NCBI GenBank assembly: GCA_002811645.1 | Contig: PDIP01000018.1 | Span: forward strand, 83,609 to 147,608 | DNA: 64,000 nt | Reading direction: 5' to 3' | Source of the DNA: Corallochytrium limacisporum Hawaii | Lineage: Eukaryota > Protista > Pluriformea | In this document: in pieces, positions 7,824 to 54,381 of the stretch | How positions within the stretch are numbered: the stretch's first letter is position 1 | Layout: every line of letters begins with the position of its first letter | The notes under the pieces: model-generated | What the model saw: only the letters and a program-made list of their open reading frames with translations | The model's database searches: none | What the model was told of the DNA's origin: nothing | Program-made: the position numbers and the translations under genes

Positions 7824-8099
7824 CTGGAGGCCATAGTGGAACTCTCAGGTGAGACCCCTCTAGGGTCCTCGGCAACGGTACATTTCAATGCCGGCCAGGT
7901 ATGTGATGTCTTGCGTGTAATTTAGTTGGAGTAACAATGTATGACTGAGAACAACATTAGAGACGTTCGACGATAGGAGAAAAGTAACACTTAATGATAA
8001 CATTCATCTATAAACAAAGTCAAGACACATCCACCTACATCAAACGGGTACAGAACCATGGTCCAGCAACACAAAAAGCACTAGTTGGAGAATTGGCCA

Positions 8100-16440: not shown

Positions 16441-18181
16441 ACGATCAGTAATCTGAAACTTAGTTGCGCATGGTGCTGAAGGATATTAAAAATTAACATA
16501 GGTCCTCTAACGATAATGAGTATATTAAACAGAAACGTTTGCAATAGTATGTGAACATAAGCAGGATCCTAACCATAGTCATTTTCATGTTGGCATCATG
16601 ATGATGGACTGCACACATTAGGGAGCAATCATTGGCACCCTTCCAATACATCCCCTCTTCATTCAAACACAATTTTACTATACAAATGATATGGAAACTT
16701 CTCCTTTGAAATTCGCATTTGCCTATACAGCATGCAATGCTACCATAGTTAACCCTACCCGGCTATTGCAACAGCCATCGCGTGCCACCCTTCGGCCCCT
16801 GGACCTTTTGTTTTTGTTATGGTCGCTCGATGGGAGCCTAATTTTCAGGCAACTCTATACATTCAGTAAGGCCCCCACGGCTTCAAAGGTCGGGAGTCTA
16901 TTATTTCATTGTAGGCCCATCCCAGGAACCCCCGGGACGATGGACCACCGCTCCGGATGTCATCAGTCCCCCTGGCCCCACCTCAAGGCTGCGCTACTGA
17001 AAGTACTGCAAACCCTTTGCAGCCCCATTGGCCACAGCCGGCGAAAGATCTTCCCGGCTTCGCACAGCGGACCAAACGGCAGCGGGACGGCAGGGAAAAG
17101 TGACCCAGGGCTCCCTCCCCCTCTCCACCGCGGGCGGTGGCCGAGAGAAACCCAACGATCGATCGCTTTTCGAGCACCGCAAAAAGGCCCGTTTGTGGAG
17201 GGGGGGCGAAGTCAGAAGACTGACACATTACTTTTTTTCTATTACCTCCATATTCTTTTGTGGCCGTCTCCGGGACATTTTCTCTTGGGACGGGAGGACT
17301 ACTCAATTTCTTCCGGGACTCTCACTATGATTTCTAATTTTCCAGTTTGCAAGGTATTTTGATTTTCTGGTTTTCTTGTTTCTTTAATGGTTTTTTTTGA
17401 GCGGGAAACAATTCCTGGAGAAGAGGGAGGGGGGGGGGAGTTTCTGCGATAAGGCAGAGCACCTGAAGAGGGGCTCTGCAAATCGTTGGTCCCGAAAAAA
17501 AAATGAGGGAATATTTTAGCAGCGAAAGCGAAAGGCTGAGGACAGTGGCAGCCCCAAAAGCCGAACACAGCGCACAGAGGCCGACAACCGGACCGAGACT
17601 GAGAGACAGAGGAAGAAAGGACTGGGAGATGCGTGCACAGATTAGAGAGACCCCGCAGGACTCATTGCGCAGCAGCAAAAGCTGCATTTGTTTGCTATCA
17701 CAACCCCTCCCCTACCAACACCCCGGTCCCCGAGTGAGGTCAGTTCTGGGCTTGCGATTGGACACAGGGGCTCCCGGTGTCACTGCGGCGGTGCCGGGAA
17801 TGATCTGCTGGCTGGAAGCACGCCACCGTCCGTGTCAATAATTTCCAATCGTTCCGGACTTCACGGACAGACCAAACGATGATAATTGGCGTCCATGGAT
17901 GTCAATGTGAGCTGTCGTTCTCATGGGTACAAGGCTCCGGTGATGGCTGTTGAGAGCGGCTATATGAGATCAGTTGGCCGGCTGTGGAGTCAGTGGGTCA
18001 GTCACGAACGCTTGCTTGAGTTACCACCTCGGGAACTGCGTAGTCCACTCATTGAATAGGAATCGTAAGTCACCTCGAACCACGTGACATGAGATACAGC
18101 ACAAGATGACGTAGCCCAATTCAGTGCAATTACAATGATCTACGGGTGTTCATACCAGCAGATGCTGAAATTGGGACCAGT

Positions 18182-21100
18182 ATGATTGCAGAGAGGCGGG
18201 TCCTTTTCGACGGGTTCATCCCGTTTCGCAAGCAGGACACCACAGATCCGCAGCCTGATTGGAGTACGCTCACAGGATGGTACGTGGACAAGAAAACAAG
18301 ACGGATCACTGCACGTATCCTAATACGCCATGTTGCGTTAGTTACAGCAATAGGCATCCGCGGAGACAGTGCATCGCGGCTTCAGTTCGAAGGGTGTCAG
18401 TTCTTTCTCGACATCTCTGGCTTCCATGGCACGGCAGCTTCAGAACAAGCTGAGGCCGAAGTATTTGATGCTGATCAAGAAGCATCTCTAGCAACAACAG
18501 TGCCATCTTTCGGTGGGGTAACGTGGAGCAAGCAGTCAACTCTCCCGGTGCCCGGGTTTGAGGAAGATAAGGGGCTAGTGTTCCATGTGGCAGGCGCTGG
18601 AAAACTCATTGATATCTGCTTCAGCCTCCCGGAGGACTTGGGGGCCATTGATGAGAGACGAGTATCCTCATGGTGTGTAGTACTCGATGGGTTCCCCGCC
18701 TACGCTCTGCCTCCAAGTAGGGAGCATATTCAGCTGCTAAACGTTACCCGGGCTTTCCAATTGGATCTGGTACAGCACCACAAGAAGTTCGAGGCCGTCA
18801 AGGCAAAGGAGGAGAAGGTTAAGGGAGTTACAGAGCAGCAACCAAACCTGACCCTCTCTGAGTCACCTCATCTCGCAGTTACTCTGCTACTGTCGGCGCA
18901 GTCTTTGCTGGGCGCTCGAAAGTATCGTCAAGCCATCGAATTTTTGCGCACATACATTGCTGCGGTGGAATCGGATCCATTGTTGATTGAAAGTGGGGGC
19001 AGTCCCTCTAGTGATCGGTACGGCTCTCCGGAATTTCGGCCCGAAGACGACAGTGAGTTAGAAAAGGGCATAAATGAGGATTTCAGTCGGCATGGTTCGG
19101 ATCCATATCGTACGGCACAGCAGCGGAAGCGAACCAGTGGCAAATCTAGCAAGCGGAACTCTTACTTAAACGATCGCCAGCACTCCCCGCTGACTTTGCC
19201 ATCTGGAAGTTGGCCAGGCAGAAATGTGCTTGGGCCACAGAGTAGTCGGAGTAGCGGATCAATGCAACCTGCATCAGTGCACTCATTGTCGGGACTTCGT
19301 TGGAAACCACCAGCGTGGAGCTCCGGAGCGTACTCGTTTTTTGAGACGCAGTCAGTACCGAATGCCAAGGCAGCACGAAGGGCACAGAGAGGTTCCAGGG
19401 GCACACCACCTGAAGTGGAGGAAAAGGATCGATCTAACATAGAAACGGTTAAGGAAGCACACGAAAATTTGATACGACAGCCAGCGATGGGTCCCTGTAA
19501 CACGGCCATGGCCAAATGGCGAGAAATGATGAGACCAGTTGACTCGGGCGTGGGTGAAGGTACGAATTGTCTGCGTGAGCAGCGCGTAAACCAGAGGCCT
19601 CCTAACGGTGAAAATCACACAGCTGAACAGAGCTGGAGCGCAAGCAGCAATGGGCTGAAATGGTCGGAAGGGGAGTATTGGTCACCGTACCAACACAATA
19701 TCATTTCAGTTGAAGAGCCCAGGGTGGATACCGTACGGGCCGAGGGAACAAAGATTGGGAGACCGGATATTGCTTCAACATCGGTGGAACCAGATGAGCA
19801 TGCCGCTGGAATAGTAGAGTTTATTGAGGACTTAGAAGAGCCCGACGCTTGTATGTCTGAACATGGCATTTGGTTTGGTGAGATGCTGTTGCCAACAGCA
19901 GACCATGCTCGATTAATCGTCGCAGATGCACACTTCCGCCGGGGGGCAGACCATCACTGGCTGAGCGTTCTGCTTGAAGCAGCGGGACGGCCGCCACATC
20001 TGCGCGCACACCTTCCGCACGCCAATGATGGGCGAATTGGTGATGCTGTCGATGAAGTCCTTCATCATGGTATCGTGGGTCAGGAACCCCTTCGTCCAGA
20101 GGATCTCCGGGAGGTTACAATTTGCCTAGGCGGCGCACTTTGTGCAGCAATCGACCACCCGTATGAAGTGATCCGTACGGCTAGCCTGCACTGCTTGGAG
20201 CATCTCCTTCAACTCTATCCATCAGCGGTTGGCATGCTTGCAAGTCCGATGGTCCTGTCACTTGCCAAAGCGGCACCACCAGTGCGGTTGGCACGTGGCA
20301 TGATTATACAGAACGGACATCTCACAAGCAGAAGCAATGGCAATGGCAACGGTCCCCCGAGACCAAATCGATCTAAGGCCGGCAGGGCGGTGCGGGGATC
20401 GCTAGGGCCGCTTGGTAGCCCCCGCGAACAAGTTGTGGATGTCAACGAACCCTTGCGCGGAAGTGGTGCCGGCGAGGCACTTCAGCTTCATATATCTGAT
20501 GGTATGCCCAGCCATTCGTCAGAGCAAGGGGGGCAACTGAAGCAGGGACTGGGACTGCACGACGAAGTGCTTGCTGAGGAGGGGATGGAAGACCACGTCG
20601 GTCGAACCGGTATCTTACACAGCCGATTGAGTCGGATGAACCGCGACAATAGCTTGACATGGCAGGCCTTTGCAGAACTGCGGACCACAAGCATGTACAC
20701 AGTGCTTCAGCACAATCGCCAGTTCGCCTCCATGCTGGAATTGTTGCCGTCCCTGAACCCTGAGATCATGCAATCACTTTTTGGTGCACTGATTCAGCTG
20801 CTTGTGCATCCTCCGATTCCCGACTACGCCCCCGTTGCTGCCGTGTATTCACGCACTAAATGGGTCGCAAAGGAGAATGACCACGAAGAGGAGGCTGCCA
20901 TGATTGAGGATTTTCTGTGGGGTCTAGGATCAGGATACGAAACCTACTTTGAAGGCTACGATGGAGTGGTAAGAGAAGCCCGAGACCTATCGGCACAGGC
21001 CATGAGTTCCATCCAAAAAGCTTGCCTCAAGGCTGCGCGTATGGTTATGATGGGACGACGAGGATTCCAGACAGTAGATGATGCAGATGCCTCACAGAAT

Positions 21101-24100
21101 TGGACCCGAACTCAGCGCCTGGTGCGGCAGAATCACATATTCTTCCCGACGATACAAATGTTGGATGCACTGTTTGATATCCACGAGGTTGTCCTCGGTG
21201 GACGGGACACAGATAAAGTCAAATTTGTCCGAGGAGCTCCTGATCTTGGCATGGAGTTTTTGCAGTCACTATTGCAGTATTTGGCCGGGGACGAGATTAC
21301 CACGGCCCCCGCGACCAGCAGAGGCGGCCTCAGAAGCGAAAGCGGGATCATTGGTTCATTCAGCAATCGCTCGTCATCGTTCTCGATCAACAGTGCAGCG
21401 TTCGGATTTGGCATGCTCAATGACGGCACCACAACTGCGGAGCGCTTTCGGCAGCATAGCATGGCAACCCGTCAGATAATCGCTGTATTGCATCGCATGC
21501 AGCGCAATTCTCGTGGATGGCCAAACGGCGCCTGTCATAGTACACTGGAGTGGGCGCTGAGAAGACTGCAGAGGTTGGGTAATTTCAGTCCGTTGAGTCC
21601 CTGCGCCTCCTCTTACGAATTGTTACTGAATTTCGTCTTTTTGAGTGCTGTCGAAGCGAAGCATATTCCGCGGACATCGAAGGCCAGGCGCACATGTCAA
21701 AGGTTAGTTGCCAGTGTCTGCAAGCTGCTGCTTGATCGGGTCATCCTCTTATGGAGGCCTGACCTAGATCCGGATGGTGAAGCAGCGCAAGAATTTGTTC
21801 GTGTCTGGACCGATTTCTGTATTGTAACGGAACAGATTCCTTTGGAACAGCGGGTAGCAGTGGACAGTCTGCTCGAACGGATCGTGTCACTGGCATCCGG
21901 TCTGGTTGATGGAGGAGACGTCGGTGTGAGCTTTTTTGCCAGCGTCAACCTTCTCTTGCAGCCTTCCCTAGCATACGATGTTAACCTTGCTACTGAATTA
22001 GAGAACCTGCTGTCCAAGCTCATCAGCCGAGCTATCGACCGCACCGATGGTCACGCGGCGCAGCACTGCGCATTGGCGATCTCGGTTATTCGCATGCTTA
22101 AGTATCCCTTGAGCAAAACAGTGCTTTTCCAACTGTTTGATAGCATTCCGGTGCTTTTGCGCATGCGGGACCGGGTTGCACCTTTCTTCAGTACCAACTT
22201 CCTCAATGGTACGTCTGGCTCAGGAGCCACCGCAGAAGAGGATGCACTGACCATAATGCGCTCTCTTTGCTCGGTATACGCGACAATGTGCGTGTCAACG
22301 CGACCGGACGGCAACGAAGAGCTAAACAACCGCTTTATTGTAGCCCCGAAACGCTGCCGCTTGAAGGATCAGGGCAGCCCTGGCAGCGAACCGCACTGTC
22401 TGTATCAAGGGGTCTTCCTGGAATTCAGCACCTGGTGGGAAGCAACTTGGCAGAAACTTCATCTCGAGGACACCAGCCGATCTCATTCCCACAAAAACAT
22501 GGCTGAGCGCACACAGTTCACGGGAGACTACACAGAATCTGGAGTAGACATTGATGCATACTACGTGCACTCTGCTGCTCTACACTTCGTTGAGATCTGG
22601 AGTGGTCTCGCCGGCGGCGTTCCACTGGTATCGCAGGTGCCACCGAAACATGGATTAGGAACCCCCACCAAAAGTGAATTGGAGACTTCATCCAAGGGTT
22701 CCTCTGAAGAGGACTGGCAACTCGTTTTTGAGAATTTTTTGATGTCGCAGCAAGACGATGTCGTGGAACAAGGTGGCGATCATATGGATTTGGACCTAGC
22801 ATTGCAACATCACGTTGCCTGGGACATCTTGGCGCAATGCACCTCAACCTGCTCGCCCCTGCTACGTATCCTCAGCAACGGCAGTGGCAATGATGAGGAA
22901 ATAACTATGGCCAATCTGTGCTTCCGCACTTTCCAGGACAGAATTTTCCATCTGATCATTGGCTGGGTACGGCAGGAGCTACAGGGCATTGGAGCAGCGA
23001 TTGCCCTACTGCAGGAACACGGTATTGCAATTGAAGGCGTGAACGCCGGTCCTCGCGTTTCGCTCTACGGCGCCTCGCCGGACAATTCCTTGGAGCCAGG
23101 CTCACTGCTGTCACCGCCCCACATCGGGATGACGATAATTCCTCGGTGCGCCATGCTCACGGTGCTCTACGACCCTTTCATCAAAAGCCTGGCCCTGATG
23201 CGAATGGACGCGGACGGTCGCAGTGAGTGTCTGCACGCCCTGATCACCACAGCGACCTACGCCGCCTCCATTCTGCCATCCGGACATCCGGGTCTTCTGA
23301 GCATCCGCAACCTCGCCATAGATGTGTCAACTCAGCAACTCCTGCGACCGCATGCCCGCCCAAGTCCGTTCCGCAGCATTGAGACCAAGGTGGCAATCTT
23401 GTTGTCCATGGGCATCAAGACGCTGTGTGATGGTCAGGCGTTGGCGCTGCTCAGGGAGCAACAGTGTGGCAGACCGGGCGCCAGAGGGAAGTACGTGGCC
23501 GACAGCAGTCGCACGGATGTCATTCGACGAACGTGGCAGGCTTTGGATTGTGCATTGTGTCTCATGAATCAGCGCATGATTGTGGGGCTGCGCCTTACAG
23601 CGCTGTGGTGCATGGCGCGCCTCTTGAGTGTAATTCCGCTGGTTTTGGACAGCAGTGAAATGAGCATGACCGGCATAAGCGTGTCTGAGGAGACTAGCAT
23701 GTCGAAGAATGGTTATTCAAATTTGTTGGCCACCGCAAGAGAAGCATGGCAATGTTTACGTGGTATTGCCACAGACCCGTCCCACGTTTTCCGCCGGTTT
23801 GCAAGGCAGGTTGTGGCGCTGACGTGCCCGGGAAGCCTTGGGGACGGACTTTTGCATGCGGAACTAGAAGAGTTTCTTCTTAATCCGTGGCTGGTGAGCA
23901 ACCGCGCTCGAAACCTGCTTCTGCAGCCAATGCAGCAAGGCACTGGTAGTAATCCACTCGTTTCTCACAATGAGAACAGCGTTGTGAGTGCAGTGCAGCG
24001 GCTGTTCCGATACCATGCCATGCAATTCGATGCATGTCATCCGCTGCGGACCGAGGACGTCTTTCCATACCTTTGGGCTATGCGTAGCACCCCACCACAG

Positions 24101-25123
24101 GACGAGGGAGCCAGCCACGGACCAAGCCGCGGAAGTTACGGCGCCGGTGCTAGCAGCCATAGCAATGCACGCGGCACTCCCCACCAGAGTCAGAGTCTGC
24201 CCATCCCGCAACACTCATCGCACCTTATGCGCCGGATCATTGATGGCAGCAAGGCCATGGATCCGAAAGGAAGCCTTATGCCCCCGTTGGTGAGCGGAAA
24301 TCCGACCAGCGCACCTGGTGGTGTCGTCACCTTGGCATCGTCGTCAGTGGAACGAGAGCCTTCGCCCCCTGGAGCGCGAGGACCGGGATCTGGATTGGAG
24401 GCTGCCATGGGTGTGAGCGCACTCCGCGACTCGCTGAACATTGCAATGCCTCCCCCGCCAGGCACGACAGACCCGGAACTGGCTGTGTCCATCGACGATG
24501 TTGACTCGGAAGAGGACGTCGTTGATCCAACGGAGGTGATGGTTGATGAGATTGACGTTACTCCTCCTACAGCCCTACGAATGTCCGCTGAAGAGGAAGC
24601 TGACGAGCTGGCAGCACTTGAAGCAACCGAGGCATTAGAAATCGGGGACAACAACACCATTGGTCCGAAGAAGCAACGTGATCCTTCACCAGATCCTCCA
24701 CAAGATCGACAGCACGGCGAGAACCCGAATGCAGCTGTTGGTGAACCTGCTGCGACAGAGCCTGACGAACCCAAGCAAACATCCGCGTCGACGACCCCCG
24801 TTGTTGCTGTAGAAGATTCACGACAGTCACCGCCGGAGGTGCCCCAATCGGTAGCGGCCGTCGATCTTGGCACAACGGCGCAAACCGTGCCCCTTGGCGG
24901 ACTGCGAGGCAACCGGCGGCCGCACCGGCCCGCAACCGGAGCTGTCGGGGACCGTGGGGCACGACCGGGCGGTCCTGGGCGTTCCCAAAGCGCCACCGCG
25001 GCACTTGAGTCATTTTACAATGACCTGGGCGCGGACCAGGACGACGAGGTCGAGTATCTGTACATCCGGGATGAACTAGACCGCCTCGCTGATGAAGAGG
25101 ACGATGACTCAGTTGACACGTGA
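18182..25123 (+). CDS. Very large hypothetical protein, probable HEAT/ARM-like alpha-solenoid
   Basis: Uninterrupted ORF of more than 2300 codons. Leu-rich helical segments (e.g. HPYEVIRTASLHCLEHLL) alternate with disordered regions. No family recognised. First ATG is at 18182. Confidence 0.85.
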   Translation: MIAERRVLFDGFIPFRKQDTTDPQPDWSTLTGWYVDKKTRRITARILIRHVALVTAIGIRGDSASRLQFEGCQFFLDISGFHGTAASEQAEAEVFDADQEASLATTVPSFGGVTWSKQSTLPVPGFEEDKGLVFHVAGAGKLIDICFSLPEDLGAIDERRVSSWCVVLDGFPAYALPPSREHIQLLNVTRAFQLDLVQHHKKFEAVKAKEEKVKGVTEQQPNLTLSESPHLAVTLLLSAQSLLGARKYRQAIEFLRTYIAAVESDPLLIESGGSPSSDRYGSPEFRPEDDSELEKGINEDFSRHGSDPYRTAQQRKRTSGKSSKRNSYLNDRQHSPLTLPSGSWPGRNVLGPQSSRSSGSMQPASVHSLSGLRWKPPAWSSGAYSFFETQSVPNAKAARRAQRGSRGTPPEVEEKDRSNIETVKEAHENLIRQPAMGPCNTAMAKWREMMRPVDSGVGEGTNCLREQRVNQRPPNGENHTAEQSWSASSNGLKWSEGEYWSPYQHNIISVEEPRVDTVRAEGTKIGRPDIASTSVEPDEHAAGIVEFIEDLEEPDACMSEHGIWFGEMLLPTADHARLIVADAHFRRGADHHWLSVLLEAAGRPPHLRAHLPHANDGRIGDAVDEVLHHGIVGQEPLRPEDLREVTICLGGALCAAIDHPYEVIRTASLHCLEHLLQLYPSAVGMLASPMVLSLAKAAPPVRLARGMIIQNGHLTSRSNGNGNGPPRPNRSKAGRAVRGSLGPLGSPREQVVDVNEPLRGSGAGEALQLHISDGMPSHSSEQGGQLKQGLGLHDEVLAEEGMEDHVGRTGILHSRLSRMNRDNSLTWQAFAELRTTSMYTVLQHNRQFASMLELLPSLNPEIMQSLFGALIQLLVHPPIPDYAPVAAVYSRTKWVAKENDHEEEAAMIEDFLWGLGSGYETYFEGYDGVVREARDLSAQAMSSIQKACLKAARMVMMGRRGFQTVDDADASQNWTRTQRLVRQNHIFFPTIQMLDALFDIHEVVLGGRDTDKVKFVRGAPDLGMEFLQSLLQYLAGDEITTAPATSRGGLRSESGIIGSFSNRSSSFSINSAAFGFGMLNDGTTTAERFRQHSMATRQIIAVLHRMQRNSRGWPNGACHSTLEWALRRLQRLGNFSPLSPCASSYELLLNFVFLSAVEAKHIPRTSKARRTCQRLVASVCKLLLDRVILLWRPDLDPDGEAAQEFVRVWTDFCIVTEQIPLEQRVAVDSLLERIVSLASGLVDGGDVGVSFFASVNLLLQPSLAYDVNLATELENLLSKLISRAIDRTDGHAAQHCALAISVIRMLKYPLSKTVLFQLFDSIPVLLRMRDRVAPFFSTNFLNGTSGSGATAEEDALTIMRSLCSVYATMCVSTRPDGNEELNNRFIVAPKRCRLKDQGSPGSEPHCLYQGVFLEFSTWWEATWQKLHLEDTSRSHSHKNMAERTQFTGDYTESGVDIDAYYVHSAALHFVEIWSGLAGGVPLVSQVPPKHGLGTPTKSELETSSKGSSEEDWQLVFENFLMSQQDDVVEQGGDHMDLDLALQHHVAWDILAQCTSTCSPLLRILSNGSGNDEEITMANLCFRTFQDRIFHLIIGWVRQELQGIGAAIALLQEHGIAIEGVNAGPRVSLYGASPDNSLEPGSLLSPPHIGMTIIPRCAMLTVLYDPFIKSLALMRMDADGRSECLHALITTATYAASILPSGHPGLLSIRNLAIDVSTQQLLRPHARPSPFRSIETKVAILLSMGIKTLCDGQALALLREQQCGRPGARGKYVADSSRTDVIRRTWQALDCALCLMNQRMIVGLRLTALWCMARLLSVIPLVLDSSEMSMTGISVSEETSMSKNGYSNLLATAREAWQCLRGIATDPSHVFRRFARQVVALTCPGSLGDGLLHAELEEFLLNPWLVSNRARNLLLQPMQQGTGSNPLVSHNENSVVSAVQRLFRYHAMQFDACHPLRTEDVFPYLWAMRSTPPQDEGASHGPSRGSYGAGASSHSNARGTPHQSQSLPIPQHSSHLMRRIIDGSKAMDPKGSLMPPLVSGNPTSAPGGVVTLASSSVEREPSPPGARGPGSGLEAAMGVSALRDSLNIAMPPPPGTTDPELAVSIDDVDSEEDVVDPTEVMVDEIDVTPPTALRMSAEEEADELAALEATEALEIGDNNTIGPKKQRDPSPDPPQDRQHGENPNAAVGEPAATEPDEPKQTSASTTPVVAVEDSRQSPPEVPQSVAAVDLGTTAQTVPLGGLRGNRRPHRPATGAVGDRGARPGGPGRSQSATAALESFYNDLGADQDDEVEYLYIRDELDRLADEEDDDSVDT

Positions 25124-25228: not shown

Positions 25229-26341
25229 TCACTGTTCCTCAAGAGAATCCGCGCCACGTAGTCTATGGTACGACCCGGCACCACCTTGTGTCGCTGACCG
25301 CCCGCTGTTGCGGCGCTGCCGCGTGTTCTCCAGCGGCAGAGCGGGCGACCGGTCATGGTTGACATTGCTGTGGAGGTTCGATCCAGTGGTATGACTGTTG
25401 CTACTGTTGTGGTGATCCGACGATGGGGAGAAGTGGCTGGCCACATCGACCTGGCTCGCCACAAAGTACCGAATACATGCACTGCCACACTCGGCGCAGA
25501 ATTTCTGGCTCTGTTTCAGGGTGCAGCCGCAATTTGCGCAGAAACCGCCTTTGTCTTTGCCAGTCAGGCGCTCTAAAAGCGAATGGCTCTCCGTCGGTTC
25601 CACCCCGTTGTCTTCGTCGTCCAAAGTGCCGGGACGGATGCGGAAAGACTGCACGCTGCGAGTCAGGCGGGACAGTTGGAGCCATTGCGTAATCATGATC
25701 GCCACGCAAACAACTTGCATCAGCGCAAGAATGATCAGTCCGGCAACAGACACTGGTCCCAGTTCAACTTTCTCAAGATGTACTTCCACTGGTGTCTTTG
25801 GACTGTCCAAATGGATTGCCATGGGAAATTTCTTGCCCGTCATTGTCAAATCCATTGGCATAGATCCCGATTGCATGTCAATGTCCATAGAAGTGGTTTG
25901 GGTATCCATGGTCAGGTTCATGGGCGTGGATTTTGAATTCAGGTTTACATTCATGGGTGCCTTATCAACCTTGAGTGTCACATTGAACGGGACCGTATTG
26001 GAGTTCATGTTAATGTCAAAGTTCTGCTTGTCGGCGCTCAGCGCGACATCCATGTTGGTTTGGTTAATGTCAAAGTTAACGGCCATTTGTACATTCTGAC
26101 TGCTCACCCCCATATCGATCGCGGGCAGGTCCATCTCGGCCACGGCCATTTCCACATGTGTAACATTGATCTGTGAAATAATGTCGAGGACAGTTTGCTC
26201 AATGCCTTTGCGGATTGCGTCTTCAATGCCGAAGTCGACACCAAAATTGCCTACAGCATTCTGCAGCTGTGCCACTGCCGCTGTTACGGCAAGGTTTGCC
26301 AAAAATAGGTATCTACTGTGCATTATTTCCTTTGTTCCCAT
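25229..26341 (-). CDS. Type I membrane protein with 11-aa repeats and cytoplasmic zinc ribbon
   Basis: Signal-like N-terminus (YLFLANLAVTAAVA), about 11 tandem 11-mers, a TM helix (VAGLIILALMQVVCVAIMI), then FCANCG...KFCAECG. Confidence 0.82.
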   Translation of the reverse strand: MGTKEIMHSRYLFLANLAVTAAVAQLQNAVGNFGVDFGIEDAIRKGIEQTVLDIISQINVTHVEMAVAEMDLPAIDMGVSSQNVQMAVNFDINQTNMDVALSADKQNFDINMNSNTVPFNVTLKVDKAPMNVNLNSKSTPMNLTMDTQTTSMDIDMQSGSMPMDLTMTGKKFPMAIHLDSPKTPVEVHLEKVELGPVSVAGLIILALMQVVCVAIMITQWLQLSRLTRSVQSFRIRPGTLDDEDNGVEPTESHSLLERLTGKDKGGFCANCGCTLKQSQKFCAECGSACIRYFVASQVDVASHFSPSSDHHNSSNSHTTGSNLHSNVNHDRSPALPLENTRQRRNSGRSATQGGAGSYHRLRGADSLEEQ

Positions 26342-29331: not shown

Positions 29332-30930
29332 TTACAGGCGCTTCAGATTCCTCTGGGTGGCCTCCTGCTTGGCTTTCCGGCTGATACGAGGGTAGCGACG
29401 ATGCACCGGCTTCACAGATTCAATGGGAGTAGCAACGTCTTCCACGCCTGTGACGGCTGCAGTGGGCGTGCTTTGGGCGTTCGCTAAGTTGGTCAGGGCC
29501 ATGCGACGGATGTCGTCCTGGCCATCGCTGCTGCCCAGAGAACTGCGCAGTGGAGTGTCCTTCTTGTCAATGATTTTTGTCGGAGAAATAGTCCAAGACA
29601 GTGATTCGACGGTCTCCGATTCAGCCTCCACACGCGGGCGCTTTACGCGACCGACCAGACGAGGTGTACCCTGGCGGCAGCCCTGGTGAGCATCCCAGGA
29701 AGCACGCCGGGGGTAGCCATACGGGTGGTGTCGGTGACCGTAGGCACTGCTGCCATCGTTTGTTTTGTCCACAAGTTTGTGACAGGCCACGCAATAGTCG
29801 CGATCGCAGGCCTTACAGTGACGGGTGCAGAGGCCAGTGAGGGGGGACAGCACGGTGCCCCGGTTGAGCGTGGGACTGTTACAGCCGGGGCACGGGAGCT
29901 TGCCACTGGGAGTCTGTTGTTTGGTTGGCAGGAGCTGGCGGCTGACGGCAAGAGTTCGCTCGTCCTCGTCGTCTTCAAGGCCCAGAGAATTATTACCCAT
30001 GAGCTTCGAGGGCACCATTTGCAAGGAGAAGCGTTCCGGGGGAAGTTCCCCGAGGGCCGAACGACCGTGCGCCATGACATCTCTGGTGGTACTGAAGTCC
30101 GCAGCATCTGTGCGTGCCCAATGTTCCTCAAGCCCTTCAGCCAAGACGGAAGGTCGTGCAGTGGTGACAGCCAGGTCGATGTTTTCGATGTCGCTCTGCA
30201 TTGACGAATTCAGATCAACCGCAACGGTACCTTCAGTGTCGGGAACAATGTTCTCGACATCCGCCTTGCTAATGGCAGGAGCTCGGACGGTGCGAGGACT
30301 GTAGGCCTCCTGGCGGGGGCGCAGTGCACCCTGTACTGCCCCGCGCGGATCTGTTCTTTCTCCTTCAATTTGCAGCGTCTGCAGTCTGCGAGTGGCCTCT
30401 ACCATCTTCTGTTCTACCAGTTCCGAATGCTGCTGATCAACTATTTGCTGCTTCAGCATGTTAGCCTGGCGGCTGAAAATCGTGCGCCAGCTGAATCCCT
30501 GAACACTCTTTCCGACAGAACGCGGCAGTGCCGCATTGGCAGTGCTCTGCCTACGGCTCAGAGTTTCCCATAGTTCGCTTTCGCCAAATACTGCGCGCCA
30601 GTGACGATTGACTGCGCTGCACTGGGCTAGGCACCGGGCCAGAGTTGCATCGGATTCCTGGCACAGATCTACCAGTTGCCTGATTATTGTGTCTAAGATC
30701 TCAGCAGGGAGAGTGTCCCACTGTGAACTTGGAACTCTCAGGAAATGTCGTCCACCAAATCCCGAGTCTGGTGTGGCGATCTCGATCTTCTGACGCCTAC
30801 TTACAGAAGCGGGGGAGATGCCGGCGACACCGCTATCGACCGTGCTGGGTGTGACATCCTTTCCTTTACCCTTTGCAGTGATTGGGGTCTCAAAATACAT
30901 GCCAGAAGTGGCGATTTGTTTTCTCGACAT
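29332..30930 (-). CDS. Emi1/Emi2 (FBXO5/FBXO43)-like APC/C inhibitor
   Basis: DSG motifs, F-box (WDTLPAEILDTII...CSAVNRHWR), RxxL boxes, a ZBR-like CPGCNSP...C...CKACDRDYCVAC, and a C-terminal RNLKRL. Confidence 0.8.
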   Translation of the reverse strand: MSRKQIATSGMYFETPITAKGKGKDVTPSTVDSGVAGISPASVSRRQKIEIATPDSGFGGRHFLRVPSSQWDTLPAEILDTIIRQLVDLCQESDATLARCLAQCSAVNRHWRAVFGESELWETLSRRQSTANAALPRSVGKSVQGFSWRTIFSRQANMLKQQIVDQQHSELVEQKMVEATRRLQTLQIEGERTDPRGAVQGALRPRQEAYSPRTVRAPAISKADVENIVPDTEGTVAVDLNSSMQSDIENIDLAVTTARPSVLAEGLEEHWARTDAADFSTTRDVMAHGRSALGELPPERFSLQMVPSKLMGNNSLGLEDDEDERTLAVSRQLLPTKQQTPSGKLPCPGCNSPTLNRGTVLSPLTGLCTRHCKACDRDYCVACHKLVDKTNDGSSAYGHRHHPYGYPRRASWDAHQGCRQGTPRLVGRVKRPRVEAESETVESLSWTISPTKIIDKKDTPLRSSLGSSDGQDDIRRMALTNLANAQSTPTAAVTGVEDVATPIESVKPVHRRYPRISRKAKQEATQRNLKRL

Positions 30931-31028
30931 GTTCTATATATGTGTTTGGTTTGAGCACAGGTGGTAGCCTGTTTCTCGTCTGATCCGTGTGCGCCGACTA
31001 TTTGCTCCCCGTTTCGTTTTGTACGTGC

Positions 31029-31489
31029 TTTGAATATGTCGCGACGTCAATTCAGTCCAAGTACTATTGAGCGCGCACTTGATTTCGAGCACATGATGTC
31101 CAAAGCTTTTTATATACCAGTAAATATCTGCGGAAGTCTGTGCTGGTTCACTGAGCTTTGGGTCTATGTGAATCGTTCTTCCTCCGGGCCGATTCCTCAT
31201 TTTTTTTTCCCTTTTACTTTTCCGTCTTTTTAAATTTGAATTTCCCGCGCACAGACCAGCAGCCCTTGAAAATGTACCAGGAATTCGTAGGGCTGCACTC
31301 CTCGTTTCCCCCAACCCCCCCCCCCTCCCCGCCAGAAAGTTTTGGGTCGTTCTTTGTTGCTTGGGTTTTCCTTGCCTCCCTTTCTTTTCTTTTTTTTTTG
31401 GTGCGAAAATGAACAGCGGGGGCCGGGTTTGGCAGGCACACAAAAAGCCGGGAACGGGGAGCGAGGAAACCTTTGAATTTTTCGCGCGC
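31029..31489 (-). promoter_or_regulatory. Three CDE/E2F-CHR-like composite elements upstream of the Emi-like gene
   Basis: TTTGAA at 31029, 31235 and 31472, each closely followed by a CGCG core (TATGTCGCG, TTTCCCGCGC, TTTTTCGCGCGC). Confidence 0.55.
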
Positions 31490-33182: not shown

Positions 33183-34088
33183 TCACCAGTAGAATTTCTT
33201 GGTGAGCCACGAGGCAGCGGCACCGATTACACCACCGCCATCATCCTTTTTGTTTTTATCACCCTTGCGTACCAGCCATCCTGTGCCCCAGCTAGAGTCA
33301 TTCGCCGCCACGCCGTCATAGTCGTCCTCATCAATGTAGCCATCGTCAGCTTCTGCATCAGCAACTACAGGGCAAGGGTCAACCAGGACTTCCTCACCGT
33401 TGTCGTTCTTTACAACCTGTTGTGCGTGAACATCCTGCTTGTCATTGACCGCCTTGCAAATCTGTTCCACCTTTACGGCATGTGTCACCCTGACCACCAC
33501 ACGTTCCCTTGAGATGTCAAAAGTGAAGGAGATCACACCACGTACGGTCAACAGACGCTCCTCGACGATACCACGGAGCTCTGATGTATTCATGCCCTCA
33601 ACGTACAGGGTCACAGTCCTAGCCTTCTTTACACTGGCACCGGTAAAGAAAGACTGTTGTTGACGCTTGCCGGTCTGCGATCCAGCGCTAGATCCAACTG
33701 CAGCGTTAGCCTTTGCCTGTGCAAGAAGCTTCTCCCGCTTCTCATTGTTTGACGAGGCCTTTTGCGGTGAGAGGCGCTTCTCCAGTTCTTGTGCCTCATT
33801 CAGAATTTCTGGGTCGGGCAAACGGTTCTGCAGCTTCTGGAGATTGTCCAACAGACCGGCCTCACCTTGAATGGCAGTTCGACCTTCCTGCTCCTCCGTA
33901 AGGTAACGCAAGGCTTCGAGAGCAGTACGTACAACTTCAACTTCGCTGCTATCAAGGAACAGAATCAGTCCGCCTAGAGAGGCCTTGTCCCTGACAATGG
34001 CGGAACGGTTGTTCGGCTGCTTAGCCAAGTCTCGCAGAGATGAAACAATGCCTTGAACATTCATACCGGTGGCAGTATCAACAACCAT
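33183..34088 (-). CDS. ARMC1: Armadillo repeat-containing protein 1
   Basis: LRDLAKQPNNRSAIVRD...GLILFLD, an HMA-like domain (TVTLYVEGM...LLTVRGVISFTF) and the characteristic terminal ...KKFYW. Confidence 0.9.
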   Translation of the reverse strand: MVVDTATGMNVQGIVSSLRDLAKQPNNRSAIVRDKASLGGLILFLDSSEVEVVRTALEALRYLTEEQEGRTAIQGEAGLLDNLQKLQNRLPDPEILNEAQELEKRLSPQKASSNNEKREKLLAQAKANAAVGSSAGSQTGKRQQQSFFTGASVKKARTVTLYVEGMNTSELRGIVEERLLTVRGVISFTFDISRERVVVRVTHAVKVEQICKAVNDKQDVHAQQVVKNDNGEEVLVDPCPVVADAEADDGYIDEDDYDGVAANDSSWGTGWLVRKGDKNKKDDGGGVIGAAASWLTKKFYW

Positions 34089-38794: not shown

Positions 38795-40414
38795 ATGTCA
38801 AATGCTGTCGCATTCGTCCGCGACAGCGTGCGGGAGGCACAGAATTTCGTGTCCAATGTATATTACCATTATGTGGCTCCAAGTGTTGTAGCACTGGCCT
38901 CGGCATCTTTGTCATTAACCCACCGCAGTCGTGGTGACATGCACGGGGCTCTGATGGTTTACGAAGTTCGGCCACCCCTAAGTAGTGCCCTTTTGCTAAT
39001 GACGGTCACTGTCATTCCTTACTATGCACTAAAGAATCTAAAGCGAGGACTGGGTAAGTGGTATCGTAGGCGCGGGCTGCGAGACGAAGACAAAGTATAC
39101 CTGCAGCGGGAATATATGCATGTGGTATCCGACACCGGGAAATTAACCAATGGCGAGTACATGGCTCGCATCTTCACCCTAGTCCGTTTGACGTTGCGAC
39201 CACTGATCAAGGATCTTAAAAAGAGCCAGAAAATTCCCAAAAAGAGCGCCAAGAAACCGAACCCACACGAACTCCAAGGGTATATTCAGCTCATGCTCGA
39301 CCACACAGCCCTGTTTGCCGCCAAGTTGAACGCGAACAGCAGTGAACTTCGTACAATGGCACAATTCCTCATGGAGAAGCGTATGGCTTTCAAGGACTTG
39401 GTGCAAGCCGGCTTTGCGGTGCCGTTCACAGCAAAGGACGTCGGTACTGCCTTTTCATACGGACTGCAGCTCGTCAATTGGGCCACAGAGGCTGAGTATG
39501 TCTTTGAAATGGACCATCGCATGGAGATGCTGGCCAACTACCGCCAGTGTCTTTTGGTGCTTCAACAGAGTCACGTTCAGCACACAGAGCAAATGAGCCA
39601 CCTGAGGCCGGATACGCTCGTAATGGGTTGGTCACCCCCGCGGGGGCAGCCGTCATCAGGACAGTCGCCAATGAACACCAGCAGGTTGTCAAGCTATGCA
39701 GCACAGCCCGCAGATGAGAGTCTGCGAGGGTCGCAGCTGAATATGGACGCGAGATCGTTCACCCGGGAAGATGATCGCGCAGGCACTACAGTTGTAGGTA
39801 ATGATAGCACGTCTTCACAACGCGCGAGTATGAACAACCTGCAGCAGGACATGAGCCCAGTACCCGCCGCAGGTCCCCGCAAGCCGCGGTACACATCCAC
39901 TAGCAGCAATCCGAGCATGGCACGGTCAGGAGGACTGCACAACAGTGTGGATATGTCGTCCATGGCACGGGGAGATGCTATGAGTTTCTCTGAGATCAGC
40001 GAAAGCGGAACTGCGGGAGGAACGGGCAACATTAATGGCAATGGCAACGGTCTTCAGCAGCGGTCCTATACGGATAGGAATTACCCATCGTCAAACATGA
40101 CAAATGACTCGCTTGACGGTGGCTTCTTTACTGAATCAGCGTCTCAGCGATCGAATTCGCTGCGCCGGGTGAACTCACGACAACGATATAGTGGTCAATC
40201 GGGTACCCTTGTGTATCGGAATCCATCGACGACCAGCCACGGTAGCAACATTCAGCATTCCAAGTCATACCGTCTGCACCGATACGACAGCACTGCCAAG
40301 ACACCTTCCCAACGACGCAGTGAAGTGGATTTGAGCGGGTTTGATGACCATGTGGAGAGTAGGGAATATATTGCCACCAACGCGGACACGGACGAGGACG
40401 AAAGGAGCATGTAA
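38795..40414 (+). CDS. Hypothetical protein (N-terminal hydrophobic segments, helical core, Ser-rich disordered tail)
   Basis: 539-aa ORF with ATG in acaATG context. No family recognised. Confidence 0.75.
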   Translation: MSNAVAFVRDSVREAQNFVSNVYYHYVAPSVVALASASLSLTHRSRGDMHGALMVYEVRPPLSSALLLMTVTVIPYYALKNLKRGLGKWYRRRGLRDEDKVYLQREYMHVVSDTGKLTNGEYMARIFTLVRLTLRPLIKDLKKSQKIPKKSAKKPNPHELQGYIQLMLDHTALFAAKLNANSSELRTMAQFLMEKRMAFKDLVQAGFAVPFTAKDVGTAFSYGLQLVNWATEAEYVFEMDHRMEMLANYRQCLLVLQQSHVQHTEQMSHLRPDTLVMGWSPPRGQPSSGQSPMNTSRLSSYAAQPADESLRGSQLNMDARSFTREDDRAGTTVVGNDSTSSQRASMNNLQQDMSPVPAAGPRKPRYTSTSSNPSMARSGGLHNSVDMSSMARGDAMSFSEISESGTAGGTGNINGNGNGLQQRSYTDRNYPSSNMTNDSLDGGFFTESASQRSNSLRRVNSRQRYSGQSGTLVYRNPSTTSHGSNIQHSKSYRLHRYDSTAKTPSQRRSEVDLSGFDDHVESREYIATNADTDEDERSM

Positions 40415-52776: not shown

Positions 52777-54381
52777 CTAATTCATTTCATCTGAAATCTG
52801 AGATGAGGCGTGAGGAGTGGCGGTACAGTTGTCGACTGGGTGAATGTACCAGCGATTCTTGTACCCATCTGCTGGTTCCAAGGTGTAGCAGTCGTCGTAA
52901 TCAAGTAAAGATAATATATGGCTTTCACTCTCAAAGAGTTCAAGAGGATCTTCAGTTGTTCGACGTTTGCTGGGGCAACTCAGAAATTGGGGAGGAAAGG
53001 ACTCATGTAGAGTCTGATCACACATGAGCTCAGGCACACTGTTGAGGTCACAGGTCCAAATCTCCGCTGCAGCTACCTTGCCGGCAACAGAATTCGCTCT
53101 GCCGGCCACACTTGGAGAGATAAGGGTATCCAGGAAAGTATCCGACCACTCCGCACCAATCAAAATCATAGCCATTTTGGCCACATCTCTGATCTGGCCG
53201 GGGGTAGCGAGTTGGCTTTCGAGGATGAGCTCTGGGACCGTGATGTTAGCGAGGTTTGGAATTCCATTGCCCTGGATCCAGGTCTGGATACCGGTCTTCT
53301 CGGCATCATAGACCACATCACCAGTAATGTAGATGTCCGCTATAGTCTGTTGTGTCCAGACCGTAATGTTCACGACAGCTTCAGGAAGAACTGTGGGAGT
53401 GGAAGCAAACGTTACTGTCTCCGTGACTGTCTTGGTTTCGGAGACTCCTGTAGTGAGCGCTTCGGTAACAGTTGTTGACAGGCTGTCCTTGATGGTCGTA
53501 GAAATCTCATCTGTAAGGCCACCAAGGCTAATACCAGCTTTGTCGCTAACGTCAACTTCGGTAGAGACTGAAGTGGTACTGGAGACTGACTGTTGAGAGG
53601 AAACCGTTGTTGATTCAGTAACCGATTTCGAGTAATCTGCATTGAATGACAAGCATAGAGCATCACCATTACTTTCAACATGTGTGTCCGGTGCTGATTG
53701 TGTCTCAGAGGTCTGAATGTCCCAAACGCGTGTCAAGAGGTAGTCCACTGGCTGTTGACTGTAGGCTGAATTGACACTTGGCCCGATTATCGGAACACAC
53801 TGCACGGCGCCCATTATGGCTTCCAGCACTATAAAGGCTTGGTTTTGTGGGAAGCCGACTGCCCAGGGCTTGAACGATGAATCCTGGGCATTGGGGTCAC
53901 AGTACGCTTGCGAAGTATCCGAAGGACTCAAATCTTGCAGAGCATTCCACCATGCGTCCCACATGTCAGCATTCTCATCTGTTCGATTTATCTGGTAGGG
54001 TGACGCGAGAATTGGTCCTGTGAGTGCGTTGAGTTTCCAAAGCACGGAGCTCCAGGGATCTATATCACCGCTTGTAGAATTTAAAACCTGAAAGTTTCCC
54101 ACCCGGTCTAACATGTATTCCTCAAAATCAGTTCCCTGGTCAACAATGAACTGGGAAAGAGGACGCATGTCAGCTAAGCCATTCATGATCAGGAAGAAGT
54201 CGAAGTCTTGCGTTACCTGATTATTTCCATCGTCGTCCCAAATGGAGGCATCTGCAGTCATTTCCAGTGTTGGACAAAAAGGTTCAGGTAAGACTTCTCT
54301 CCTGGACGACATTGACGCTGCTGCAACCAGCGCGTATCCGCCGATCAACAGGAAGGCACAGGTCGTTTGAATGTTGGGCAT
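52777..54381 (-). CDS. Secreted aerolysin/ETX-MTX2-like beta-pore-forming protein (putative)
   Basis: Signal peptide from ATG 54381, followed by SSRR. Ser/Thr-rich strands flank a hairpin (YSKSVTESTTV...AGISLGGL...SETKTVTETVTF), followed by TVLP..VVNITV...ITGDVVY. SKRR lies 60 aa from the C-terminus. Confidence 0.7.
   Translation of the reverse strand: MPNIQTTCAFLLIGGYALVAAASMSSRREVLPEPFCPTLEMTADASIWDDDGNNQVTQDFDFFLIMNGLADMRPLSQFIVDQGTDFEEYMLDRVGNFQVLNSTSGDIDPWSSVLWKLNALTGPILASPYQINRTDENADMWDAWWNALQDLSPSDTSQAYCDPNAQDSSFKPWAVGFPQNQAFIVLEAIMGAVQCVPIIGPSVNSAYSQQPVDYLLTRVWDIQTSETQSAPDTHVESNGDALCLSFNADYSKSVTESTTVSSQQSVSSTTSVSTEVDVSDKAGISLGGLTDEISTTIKDSLSTTVTEALTTGVSETKTVTETVTFASTPTVLPEAVVNITVWTQQTIADIYITGDVVYDAEKTGIQTWIQGNGIPNLANITVPELILESQLATPGQIRDVAKMAMILIGAEWSDTFLDTLISPSVAGRANSVAGKVAAAEIWTCDLNSVPELMCDQTLHESFPPQFLSCPSKRRTTEDPLELFESESHILSLLDYDDCYTLEPADGYKNRWYIHPVDNCTATPHASSQISDEMN

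What the first reader, a model, noticed from the sequence alone, without database searches (positions are those of the whole stretch)
29332..30930. Complete Emi1/Emi2-type APC/C inhibitor in an apparently non-animal genome
Seen, in order: DSGVAG and DSGFGG motifs among TP/SP sites, an F-box, RSALGEL (D-box-like), a zinc region LPCPGCNSP...CKACDRDYCVACH, a second RMALTNLAN D-box, and the terminal basic tail TQRNLKRL. Known: vertebrate Emi1/FBXO5, Emi2/FBXO43 and fly Rca1 have this DSG degron / F-box / D-box / ZBR / RL-tail order. As recalled, Emi2 ends in RNLKRL and the Emi1 ZBR reads C..CNSP...DYC..C. The family is generally treated as metazoan. Inference: if the host is a unicellular holozoan, the Emi-APC/C switch predates animals. 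The DSG motifs lack the second Ser of the canonical DSGxxS degron.
Basis: partly seen in the sequence, partly recalled or inferred. Interest (0 to 1): 0.85.

Follow-up and report, generated by a model that had tools for sequence, protein, structure and literature searches.

The report
Emi1-like mitotic brake in a protist
A single-celled relative of animals (almost certainly Corallochytrium) has an expressed gene whose protein carries, in order, the parts of the Emi1/Emi2 brake on the cell-division ubiquitin ligase APC/C, a brake that reviews call animal-only, although the sequence has diverged too far for a standard homology search to prove kinship.

Summary
29332-30930(-) is an intact, intronless, transcribed, single-copy 532-aa gene in a 24.11-Mb, intron-free genome matching Corallochytrium limacisporum (non-animal; identity inferred). 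Order: DSG degrons, F-box, D-box, IBR-like zinc region, terminal RNLKRL.

For Emi kinship:
- Nearest ESM Atlas clusters are FBXO5/FBXO43 (0.84, lead level).
- The zinc region's top PDB hit is the Emi2 ZBR (E 0.29).
- The tail hexapeptide equals shark FBXO43's (P 4e-7).
- D-box-to-zinc spacing (57 aa) matches vertebrates (53-56).
- Three CHR-plus-E2F/CDE pairs lie upstream.
- The host encodes UBE2S (MRRL tail), UBE2C, Cdh1, Cdc20, beta-TrCP, Plk and E2F/DP.

Against:
- An Emi profile does not find the gene in its own genome.
- IGRKxG is absent; only 6 of 8 ZBR ligands are in register.
- The ZBR tree is unresolved; no other non-animal relative was found.

Best reading (0.72): a divergent Emi1/Emi2/Rca1 orthologue inhibiting APC/C-Cdh1; function untested. 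Filed as a variant, not a strict member. The first DSG does have a second Ser (DSG-x4-SP). No paper on non-animal Emi found. The scan noted this same stretch and its promoter earlier; nothing on other DNA.

The parts
29332..30930 (-). CDS, 532 aa, intronless Emi1/Emi2-like F-box protein (P0001); single copy in the genome
   Evidence: unspliced RNA-type contig 29375-31065 in run X3 and pieces in X4
30811..30837 (-). DSG degron 1 (aa 32-40, DSG-x4-S-P): candidate beta-TrCP phosphodegron whose second Ser is a CDK-type site
   Evidence: consensus from PMC4474599; function inferred
30751..30768 (-). DSG motif 2 (aa 55-60), preceded by T53-P; no second Ser within 4 residues
30550..30720 (-). F-box (aa 71-127), generic type; lacks the IGRKxG motif that precedes the F-box in animal Emi
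30037..30063 (-). D-box 1 (R290-x-A-L), 57 aa before the first zinc Cys (53-56 aa in vertebrate Emi1/Emi2)
29932..29967 (-). Predicted linker helix aa 322-333, aligned by MAFFT to the Emi pre-ZBR helix with a 5-residue offset
   Evidence: helix at model residues 3-11
29779..29892 (-). IBR-like zinc region (aa 347-384): six ZBR-type Cys in register, plus C372, H371 and H384
29677..29688 (-). H415-x2-C418: possible displaced ligands 7/8 after an insertion (H399/H401/H402 are alternatives)
   Evidence: inferred, pLDDT under 50 there
29479..29505 (-). D-box 2 (R476-x-A-L-x-x-L-x-N), cyclin-B-like, between zinc region and tail; no counterpart in animal Emi
29335..29388 (-). Basic C-terminal RL tail; last six residues identical to those of shark FBXO43 (P0019); the G-x-K-K-S-K part is not conserved in register
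31029..31044 (.). CHR (TTTGAA) plus CGCG core, 4-5 nt apart; lies inside the 5' end of the transcript contig
31235..31250 (.). CHR directly beside an E2F consensus site (TTTCCCGC); this compound occurs 7 times in the genome (control 1)
31472..31489 (.). CHR plus E2F consensus site (TTTCGCGC)

Best explanation
The gene is a highly divergent orthologue of animal Emi1/Emi2/Rca1 in a unicellular holozoan and works as a multi-site APC/C inhibitor. Shown: the gene, its transcription, the motif order, the promoter elements and the partner genes. Inferred, by analogy with Emi1: (1) E2F/DREAM-type elements switch it on at G1/S. (2) The R290 D-box occupies the Cdh1(Cdc20)-Apc10 degron site. (3) The linker helix and zinc region block UBE2C-driven ubiquitination at Apc11/Apc2. 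(4) The terminal RNLKRL competes with the host UBE2S tail (ending KKQMRRL) for the Apc2/Apc4 groove and stops K11 chain elongation. (5) Cyclins accumulate in S/G2 and re-replication is prevented. (6) At mitosis, CDK and Plk phosphorylate the N-terminal DSG-x4-SP degron and SCF-beta-TrCP destroys the protein, releasing APC/C. The second D-box may make it an APC/C substrate in G1 or add avidity.
For: Unbiased searches: ESM Atlas whole-protein neighbours at ranks 1, 2, 3, 8, 10 and 11 among 7.7 million clusters are FBXO5/FBXO43 (best 0.84). The top PDB hit of the zinc region is Emi2 ZBR 2rt9 (E 0.29). Zinc region against an Emi model: 18.2 bits, p=0.0018 versus Cys-fixed shuffles; against an RBR model 15.4 bits, while all 12 true RBR domains prefer the RBR model. 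The triad C-x2-C, Pro at C2+3, Asp at C5-2 is in 23/31 Emi, 0/16 RBR-type domains and the query. Tail P=4e-7; the only long open frame in the genome ending [KR]NL[KR]RL. D-box spacing and RxAL form match vertebrate Emi. Three CHR+E2F/CDE pairs upstream against 0.02-0.08 expected; human FBXO5 is a listed DREAM target (PMC5729532). Host has UBE2S, UBE2C (115), Cdc20 (116), Cdh1 (117), a beta-TrCP-like F-box-WD40 (48), Plk (84, 93) and E2F/DP (94). Emi mechanism from PMC5717348 and PMC6534075.
Against: No homologue at E<=0.001 among 1.84 billion representatives or E<=0.01 among scored candidates. A 230-position Emi profile did not retrieve the gene from its own genome and ranked other F-box and RBR genes instead. 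F-box ranks 22nd of 116 against the Emi F-box model; IGRKxG is absent. ZBR ligands 7/8 are not in register, and the near-invariant Arg before the third Cys is not clearly kept. Zinc-to-tail distance is 149 aa against 34-44 in animals. Only the last 6 of the 14 conserved tail residues match. The tree is unresolved with a long branch; fold searches give IBR-fold hits with RBR ligases ahead of Emi, all non-significant. The Atlas score is below 0.9. No functional data.
Confidence: 0.72

Rival explanations
1. Convergent APC/C inhibitor: a lineage-specific F-box protein that independently gained a D-box, an IBR domain from an RBR ligase and a UBE2S-mimicking tail. It works like Emi1 without common descent, as yeast Acm1/Mes1 and plant UVI4/OSD1 do with other parts (own knowledge).
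For: Short motifs evolve easily; the host UBE2S tail supplies the template; the F-box is generic; the profile search fails; the zinc region scores almost as well on the RBR model.
Against: It needs five modules to arise again in the same order, with the same D-box-to-zinc spacing, the Emi-type zinc triad and the Emi-type N-L-K-R-L rather than the UBE2S-type ending; F-box plus lone IBR is otherwise seen only in Emi clusters.
Confidence: 0.14
2. A cell-cycle-regulated SCF substrate adaptor or plain APC/C substrate: the F-box is the working part, the D-boxes and DSG only time its destruction, and the degenerate zinc region and tail no longer (or never did) inhibit APC/C.
For: The F-box is more canonical than in Emi; two D-boxes, SP/TP sites and an E2F/CHR promoter fit any cell-cycle substrate; the ZBR is incomplete; the second strain shows 7 amino-acid changes among 12 CDS SNPs, i.e. 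weak constraint in the linkers.
Against: It does not explain an exact terminal RNLKRL (P 4e-7); no SNP falls in the zinc region, D-boxes or tail (few SNPs, low power); there is no substrate-binding repeat domain behind the F-box.
Confidence: 0.11
3. Animal contamination or recent gene transfer from an animal.
For: All recognisable relatives are animal.
Against: One genomic contig at even depth spans the gene and its neighbour; GC matches the window; it is intronless like its neighbours, transcribed in two RNA-type data sets including a second strain, and far more divergent from animal Emi than animal Emi are from one another.
Confidence: 0.03

Closest known systems
Emi1/FBXO5 (vertebrates) and the single invertebrate Emi (coral P0007, molluscs, brachiopod, annelids)
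   Same: N-terminal DSG, F-box, D-box about 55 aa before an IBR-like zinc region, pre-ZBR helix, terminal N-L-[KR]-R-L; E2F/CHR-type promoter.
   Different: Short N-terminus (F-box at aa 71 against about 190-600); no IGRKxG; about 130 extra residues between F-box and D-box and about 110 extra between zinc region and tail; ligands 7/8 not in register; second D-box; tail conserved only over 6 residues.
Emi2/FBXO43 (XErp1)
   Same: Top PDB hit of the zinc region (2rt9); identical last six residues and highest zinc-region identity (35%) with shark FBXO43; two DSG-type motifs.
   Different: No FBXO43_HTH (PF28485) hit; the host has no known oocyte-type arrest; the Emi1/Emi2 split is vertebrate (own knowledge), so it cannot be assigned to either paralogue.
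Drosophila Rca1
   Same: F-box, ZBR and RL tail; Cdh1/Fzr inhibitor (PMC6534075).
   Different: No Rca1 sequence was retrieved, so not compared directly.
RBR E3 ligase IBR/BRcat and Rcat domains (Parkin, HOIP, HHARI, RNF14)
   Same: Same fold family; weak Pfam IBR hits (about 13.6-13.9 bits) and best fold-search rows.
   Different: No RING1, no second IBR, no catalytic Rcat motif; RBR domains tested lack the Emi triad and all prefer the RBR model.
UBE2S C-terminal LRRL tail
   Same: Basic tail ending [KR]RL; the host UBE2S (L111) ends in MRRL.
   Different: UBE2S is the E2 that the tail is predicted to compete with, not a relative.

Membership tests
Emi/Erp family (Emi1, Emi2, Rca1) | F-box | tested here: met
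   PF12937 above cut-off, aa 71-127
Emi/Erp family (Emi1, Emi2, Rca1) | Emi-type F-box with preceding IGRKxG motif (invariant in 14 animal sequences) | tested here: not met
   rank 22 of 116 on the Emi F-box model
Emi/Erp family (Emi1, Emi2, Rca1) | D-box followed by linker, upstream of the ZBR | tested here: met
   R290-x-A-L, 57 aa before C347 against 53-56 in vertebrates; linker helix aligned
Emi/Erp family (Emi1, Emi2, Rca1) | ZBR with IBR topology | tested here: inconclusive
   IBR-like by Pfam (E about 0.06), PDB (E 0.29), hhalign (E 1.3e-4, 54%) and fold search (non-significant; model built on an Emi alignment):
Emi/Erp family (Emi1, Emi2, Rca1) | Full C6HC ligand set in register (PMC4141206) | tested here: not met
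   Six Cys align; H-x4-C absent at the expected place; displaced candidates H415/C418, H384, H399-402
Emi/Erp family (Emi1, Emi2, Rca1) | C-terminal tail ending in RL | tested here: met
   Last six residues score 19.1 bits (Emi range 10.4-20.5), P 4e-7
Emi/Erp family (Emi1, Emi2, Rca1) | Whole conserved 14-residue tail in register | tested here: not met
   14-residue PSSM 3.4 bits against 29-44 for Emi; an S-R-K-A-K run lies five residues upstream of its expected place
Emi/Erp family (Emi1, Emi2, Rca1) | N-terminal beta-TrCP degron | tested here: met
   DSG-x4-S at aa 32-39 fits DSG-X(1-4)-S; weak alone, DSG occurs in 9% of shuffles
Emi/Erp family (Emi1, Emi2, Rca1) | Reciprocal profile detection | tested here: not met
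   Emi profile A4 against the own genome does not list the gene; ESM Atlas neighbours are FBXO5/43 at lead level only
Emi/Erp family (Emi1, Emi2, Rca1) | Monophyly of the zinc region with Emi ZBRs | tested here: inconclusive
   37-column tree, long branch, no supported placement
Emi/Erp family (Emi1, Emi2, Rca1) | Inhibits APC/C in a D-box, ZBR and RL-tail dependent way | not testable with these tools
   needs biochemistry
RBR E3 ligases | RING1-IBR-Rcat triad | tested here: not met
   11 Cys in total against 23-32 in the host's seven RBR proteins; one Cys cluster only; not found by the PF22191 genome search

The most novel reading that the evidence does not exclude
This is the first non-animal Emi1/Emi2/Rca1 orthologue. 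The whole circuit (E2F/DREAM transcription, Emi-type inhibition of APC/C-Cdh1 through a UBE2S-mimicking tail, Plk/beta-TrCP release) then existed in the holozoan ancestor, and further unicellular orthologues have been missed because the modules are spread apart by long insertions and the second zinc site is rearranged.
Probability: 0.6. Interest if true: 0.82.

Novelty: new variant of a known kind. Interest (0 to 1): 0.72.

Why it matters
Emi1 sets the irreversible G1/S switch and prevents re-replication in animals, and Emi2 is the core of egg metaphase arrest. Reviews call the family metazoan (PMC6534075, PMC5717348), and comparative cell-cycle papers on Capsaspora and early fungi do not mention it. 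An orthologue in Corallochytrium would move its origin to the base of Holozoa and show that an apparently animal-specific control is older and merely hidden by divergence. Corallochytrium can be stably transfected (own knowledge), so the question is directly testable. The natural variant also tests which Emi parts are needed: second zinc site, IGRKxG and the short ZBR-to-tail spacing.

Tried and rejected
- phmmer-type searches with the whole protein or zinc region found only itself; no viral relative; no contig record.
- Single-sequence AlphaFold was uninformative (pLDDT 42). The alignment-based model (pLDDT 65) is biased by its Emi rows, and its fold hits are non-significant.
- PDB search with the tail alone gave nothing. 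Pfam Beta-TrCP_D gave no match and rang in no control, so beta-TrCP was identified by PDB match instead. The 18S rRNA search failed for technical reasons, so host identity is inferred.
- Alignment A1 misplaced the F-box fragments and was discarded.
- A weak own-genome hit (E 0.025) is a Cys stretch in a BK-channel-like gene and was rejected as a paralogue. L169 (259-aa open frame ending QNLRRL, no Pfam hit) may not be a gene.
- ParM and angiopoietin PDB hits (E about 1) are chance.
- Literature searches for Emi1 with holozoa, choanoflagellate, Capsaspora or LECA terms gave no relevant paper. Several primary Emi papers and the 2011 APC/C phylogenomic paper could not be opened (one search returned an unrelated paper).
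- PDB Emi1/Emi2 chains have no reference id here, so they were not typed in as queries; Emi seeds came from a motif scan and a database search. No contig was taken for human: the one amniote-like locus pair (L019/L037) differs from the human chain shown.

Full report
The gene. Window 29332-30930 (-) is one open frame of 532 aa between a zinc-type dehydrogenase and a 2-oxoglutarate-dioxygenase-like gene. A genomic contig at even depth spans it and its neighbour. Two probable RNA runs cover the genes but not the spacers; one gives an unspliced contig from 29375 to 31065. That run is a second strain with 12 CDS differences, seven residues changed, none in the D-boxes, zinc region or tail (low power). 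The gene has no paralogue.

The host. The assembly has 24,109,830 bases in 286 contigs. The window is gene-dense, with long unbroken frames for TAF1, SNF2, RecQ and an ABC transporter. Neighbours are held only by EukProt. DNA runs date from 2017 and RNA-type runs from 2015. PMC5560861 gives Corallochytrium limacisporum 24.1 Mb, 7535 genes and 0.0 introns per kb, and places it among unicellular Holozoa. The identification is an inference; the rRNA check failed.

The observation. The F-box passes the Pfam cut-off. One goes against: after the sixth Cys there is no H-x4-C, so the C6HC motif that defines the ZBR (PMC4141206) is not complete in register.

Reference set. Direct searches returned only the protein itself. 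I scanned metagenomes for the ZBR ligand spacing and recovered 36 distinct animal ZBR-plus-tail sequences and RBR-type controls. One full-length frame, probably from a coral, matches human FBXO5 at E 1.6e-29. A profile search then gave named FBXO5/FBXO43 proteins from molluscs, a brachiopod, a shark and mammals, and no non-animal hit (word-based and capped at 8000 candidates, so not a test of absence).

Evidence for kinship. (a) Two searches blind to the hypothesis point to Emi. The zinc region's best match among 177,635 PDB sequences is the Emi2 ZBR (E 0.29). The whole protein's nearest ESM Atlas clusters are FBXO5/FBXO43 at ranks 1, 2, 3, 8, 10 and 11 (best 0.84, a lead by the tool's own calibration). 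(b) The last six residues equal those of shark FBXO43, with P=4e-7 for a random C-terminus; no other long frame in the genome ends [KR]NL[KR]RL. (c) The D-box has the RxAL form and lies 57 residues before the first Cys, against 53-56 in vertebrates; MAFFT aligns the following helix with the Emi pre-ZBR helix. (d) With cysteines fixed, the zinc region beats shuffles on an Emi model (p=0.0018) more than on an RBR model (p=0.026), and it leans to Emi by 2.8 bits where all 12 true RBR domains lean the other way. A three-character signature is in 23/31 Emi, 0/16 RBR-type domains and the query.

Evidence against, or limits. An Emi profile did not retrieve the gene from its own genome. hhalign aligns only 34 columns (E 1.3e-4, 54%). 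True Emi sequences score 60-95 bits on the model where the query scores 18. The F-box is generic and lacks IGRKxG. The spacers are much longer than in animals. The tree cannot place the zinc region. Fold searches show an IBR-like fold with RBR ligases listed ahead of Emi, none significant. By the stated rule the protein is therefore not filed as a strict family member.

Context. All three TTTGAA (CHR) on the + strand of the upstream spacer are followed within 3-5 bases by a CGCG or CCCGC core, and two of these form E2F consensus sites. Shuffles give 0.02-0.08 such pairs (P<=3e-4; pattern chosen after seeing the sites) and the rest of the window has one. The tightest compound occurs seven times in the genome. 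Only 2 of 52 sampled genes have two E2F sites within 600 bases upstream. The spacer is shared with the divergent dioxygenase gene, and the spacing is 3-5 rather than strictly 4 bases (PMC5729532, which also lists FBXO5 as a DREAM target). I found these sites; the scan had also noted them (s1-575094). The host encodes UBE2S with a basic tail ending MRRL, UBE2C, Cdc20 and Cdh1, a beta-TrCP-like protein, a Polo kinase and E2F/DP proteins. APC/C core subunits were not searched.

Mechanism. By analogy with Emi1 (PMC5717348, PMC6534075): cell-cycle transcription, D-box occupancy of the coactivator-Apc10 site, zinc-region interference with UBE2C, tail competition with UBE2S at Apc2/Apc4, and CDK/Plk-triggered beta-TrCP destruction. 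Only the parts list is shown; every interaction is inferred. Tail mimicry is the best-supported step, because the host's own UBE2S keeps the matching tail. ZBR action is the weakest, given the altered second zinc site.

Novelty. Reviews call Emi1 a metazoan inhibitor. Full-text searches found no paper placing it in unicellular holozoans, and two comparative cell-cycle papers do not mention it. Subscription papers and family databases could not be checked, so a prior annotation is possible. Verdict: real feature, new variant of a known kind; divergent Emi orthologue 0.72, convergent inhibitor 0.14, non-inhibitory F-box protein 0.11, contamination or transfer 0.03; interest 0.72.

Noticed in passing
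L111 (G000:C223:152930-156337), ORF 1459-2037 +: Clear UBE2S orthologue (E 3.5e-62 against 4e-29 for the next class) with a basic C-terminal tail ending MRRL, a variant of the animal LRRL tail.
   Followed up: yes
L120 (G000:C257:146902-150039), ORF 469-1908 -: The beta-TrCP-like F-box-WD40 protein itself ends in QLRRLF, the second-best Emi-tail score among 116 host proteins (13.7 bits); Pfam Beta-TrCP_D was not detected. Chance or a second RL-type tail.
   Followed up: partly
L150 (G000:C242:42545-46456), ORF 193-2481 +: Cdh1 orthologue is long (763 aa), has 10 full CDK sites, ends in LR rather than IR, and no canonical C-box was matched by my pattern.
   Followed up: no
window 33183-34088 (-): ARMC1-like protein (armadillo plus HMA-like region, C-terminal FYW); weak Pfam hits only.
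   Followed up: no
window 25229-26341 (-): Signal-peptide/TM protein with a roughly 11-residue Met-rich repeat stalk and a cytoplasmic zinc ribbon (PF13240, E 0.001).
   Followed up: no
window 18146-25123 (+), 59846-63781 (+), 38795-40414 (+), 52777-54441 (-): Long open frames (2325, 1311, 539, 554 aa) with no convincing Pfam match.
   Followed up: no
G000:C8:52871, C13:29335, C25:250648, C186:323719, C193:62893, C272:36700: Six other genomic copies of the tight CHR-E2F compound (7 in all, control 1); the downstream genes could not be fetched and are candidates for a cell-cycle regulon.
   Followed up: no
L083, L087, P0015, P0021 (metagenome contigs): A divergent Emi subgroup of unknown host lacking the pre-ZBR helix and, in the fragments held, the usual linker; forms a 100/100 clade. 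Worth identifying.
   Followed up: partly
L050:900-2303 (-), P0007: Intronless full-length Emi frame on a metagenome contig, probably a coral transcript or retrocopy; useful cnidarian-type reference.
   Followed up: partly
L044, L046, L069, L092 (metagenome contigs): An unassigned family of GC-rich-genome proteins with a C-terminal C-x4-C-x4-C-x2-C-x4-H-x4-C motif and an RG-rich tail ending in RL, about 80 aa after the motif; not Emi by profile (14-18 bits).
   Followed up: no
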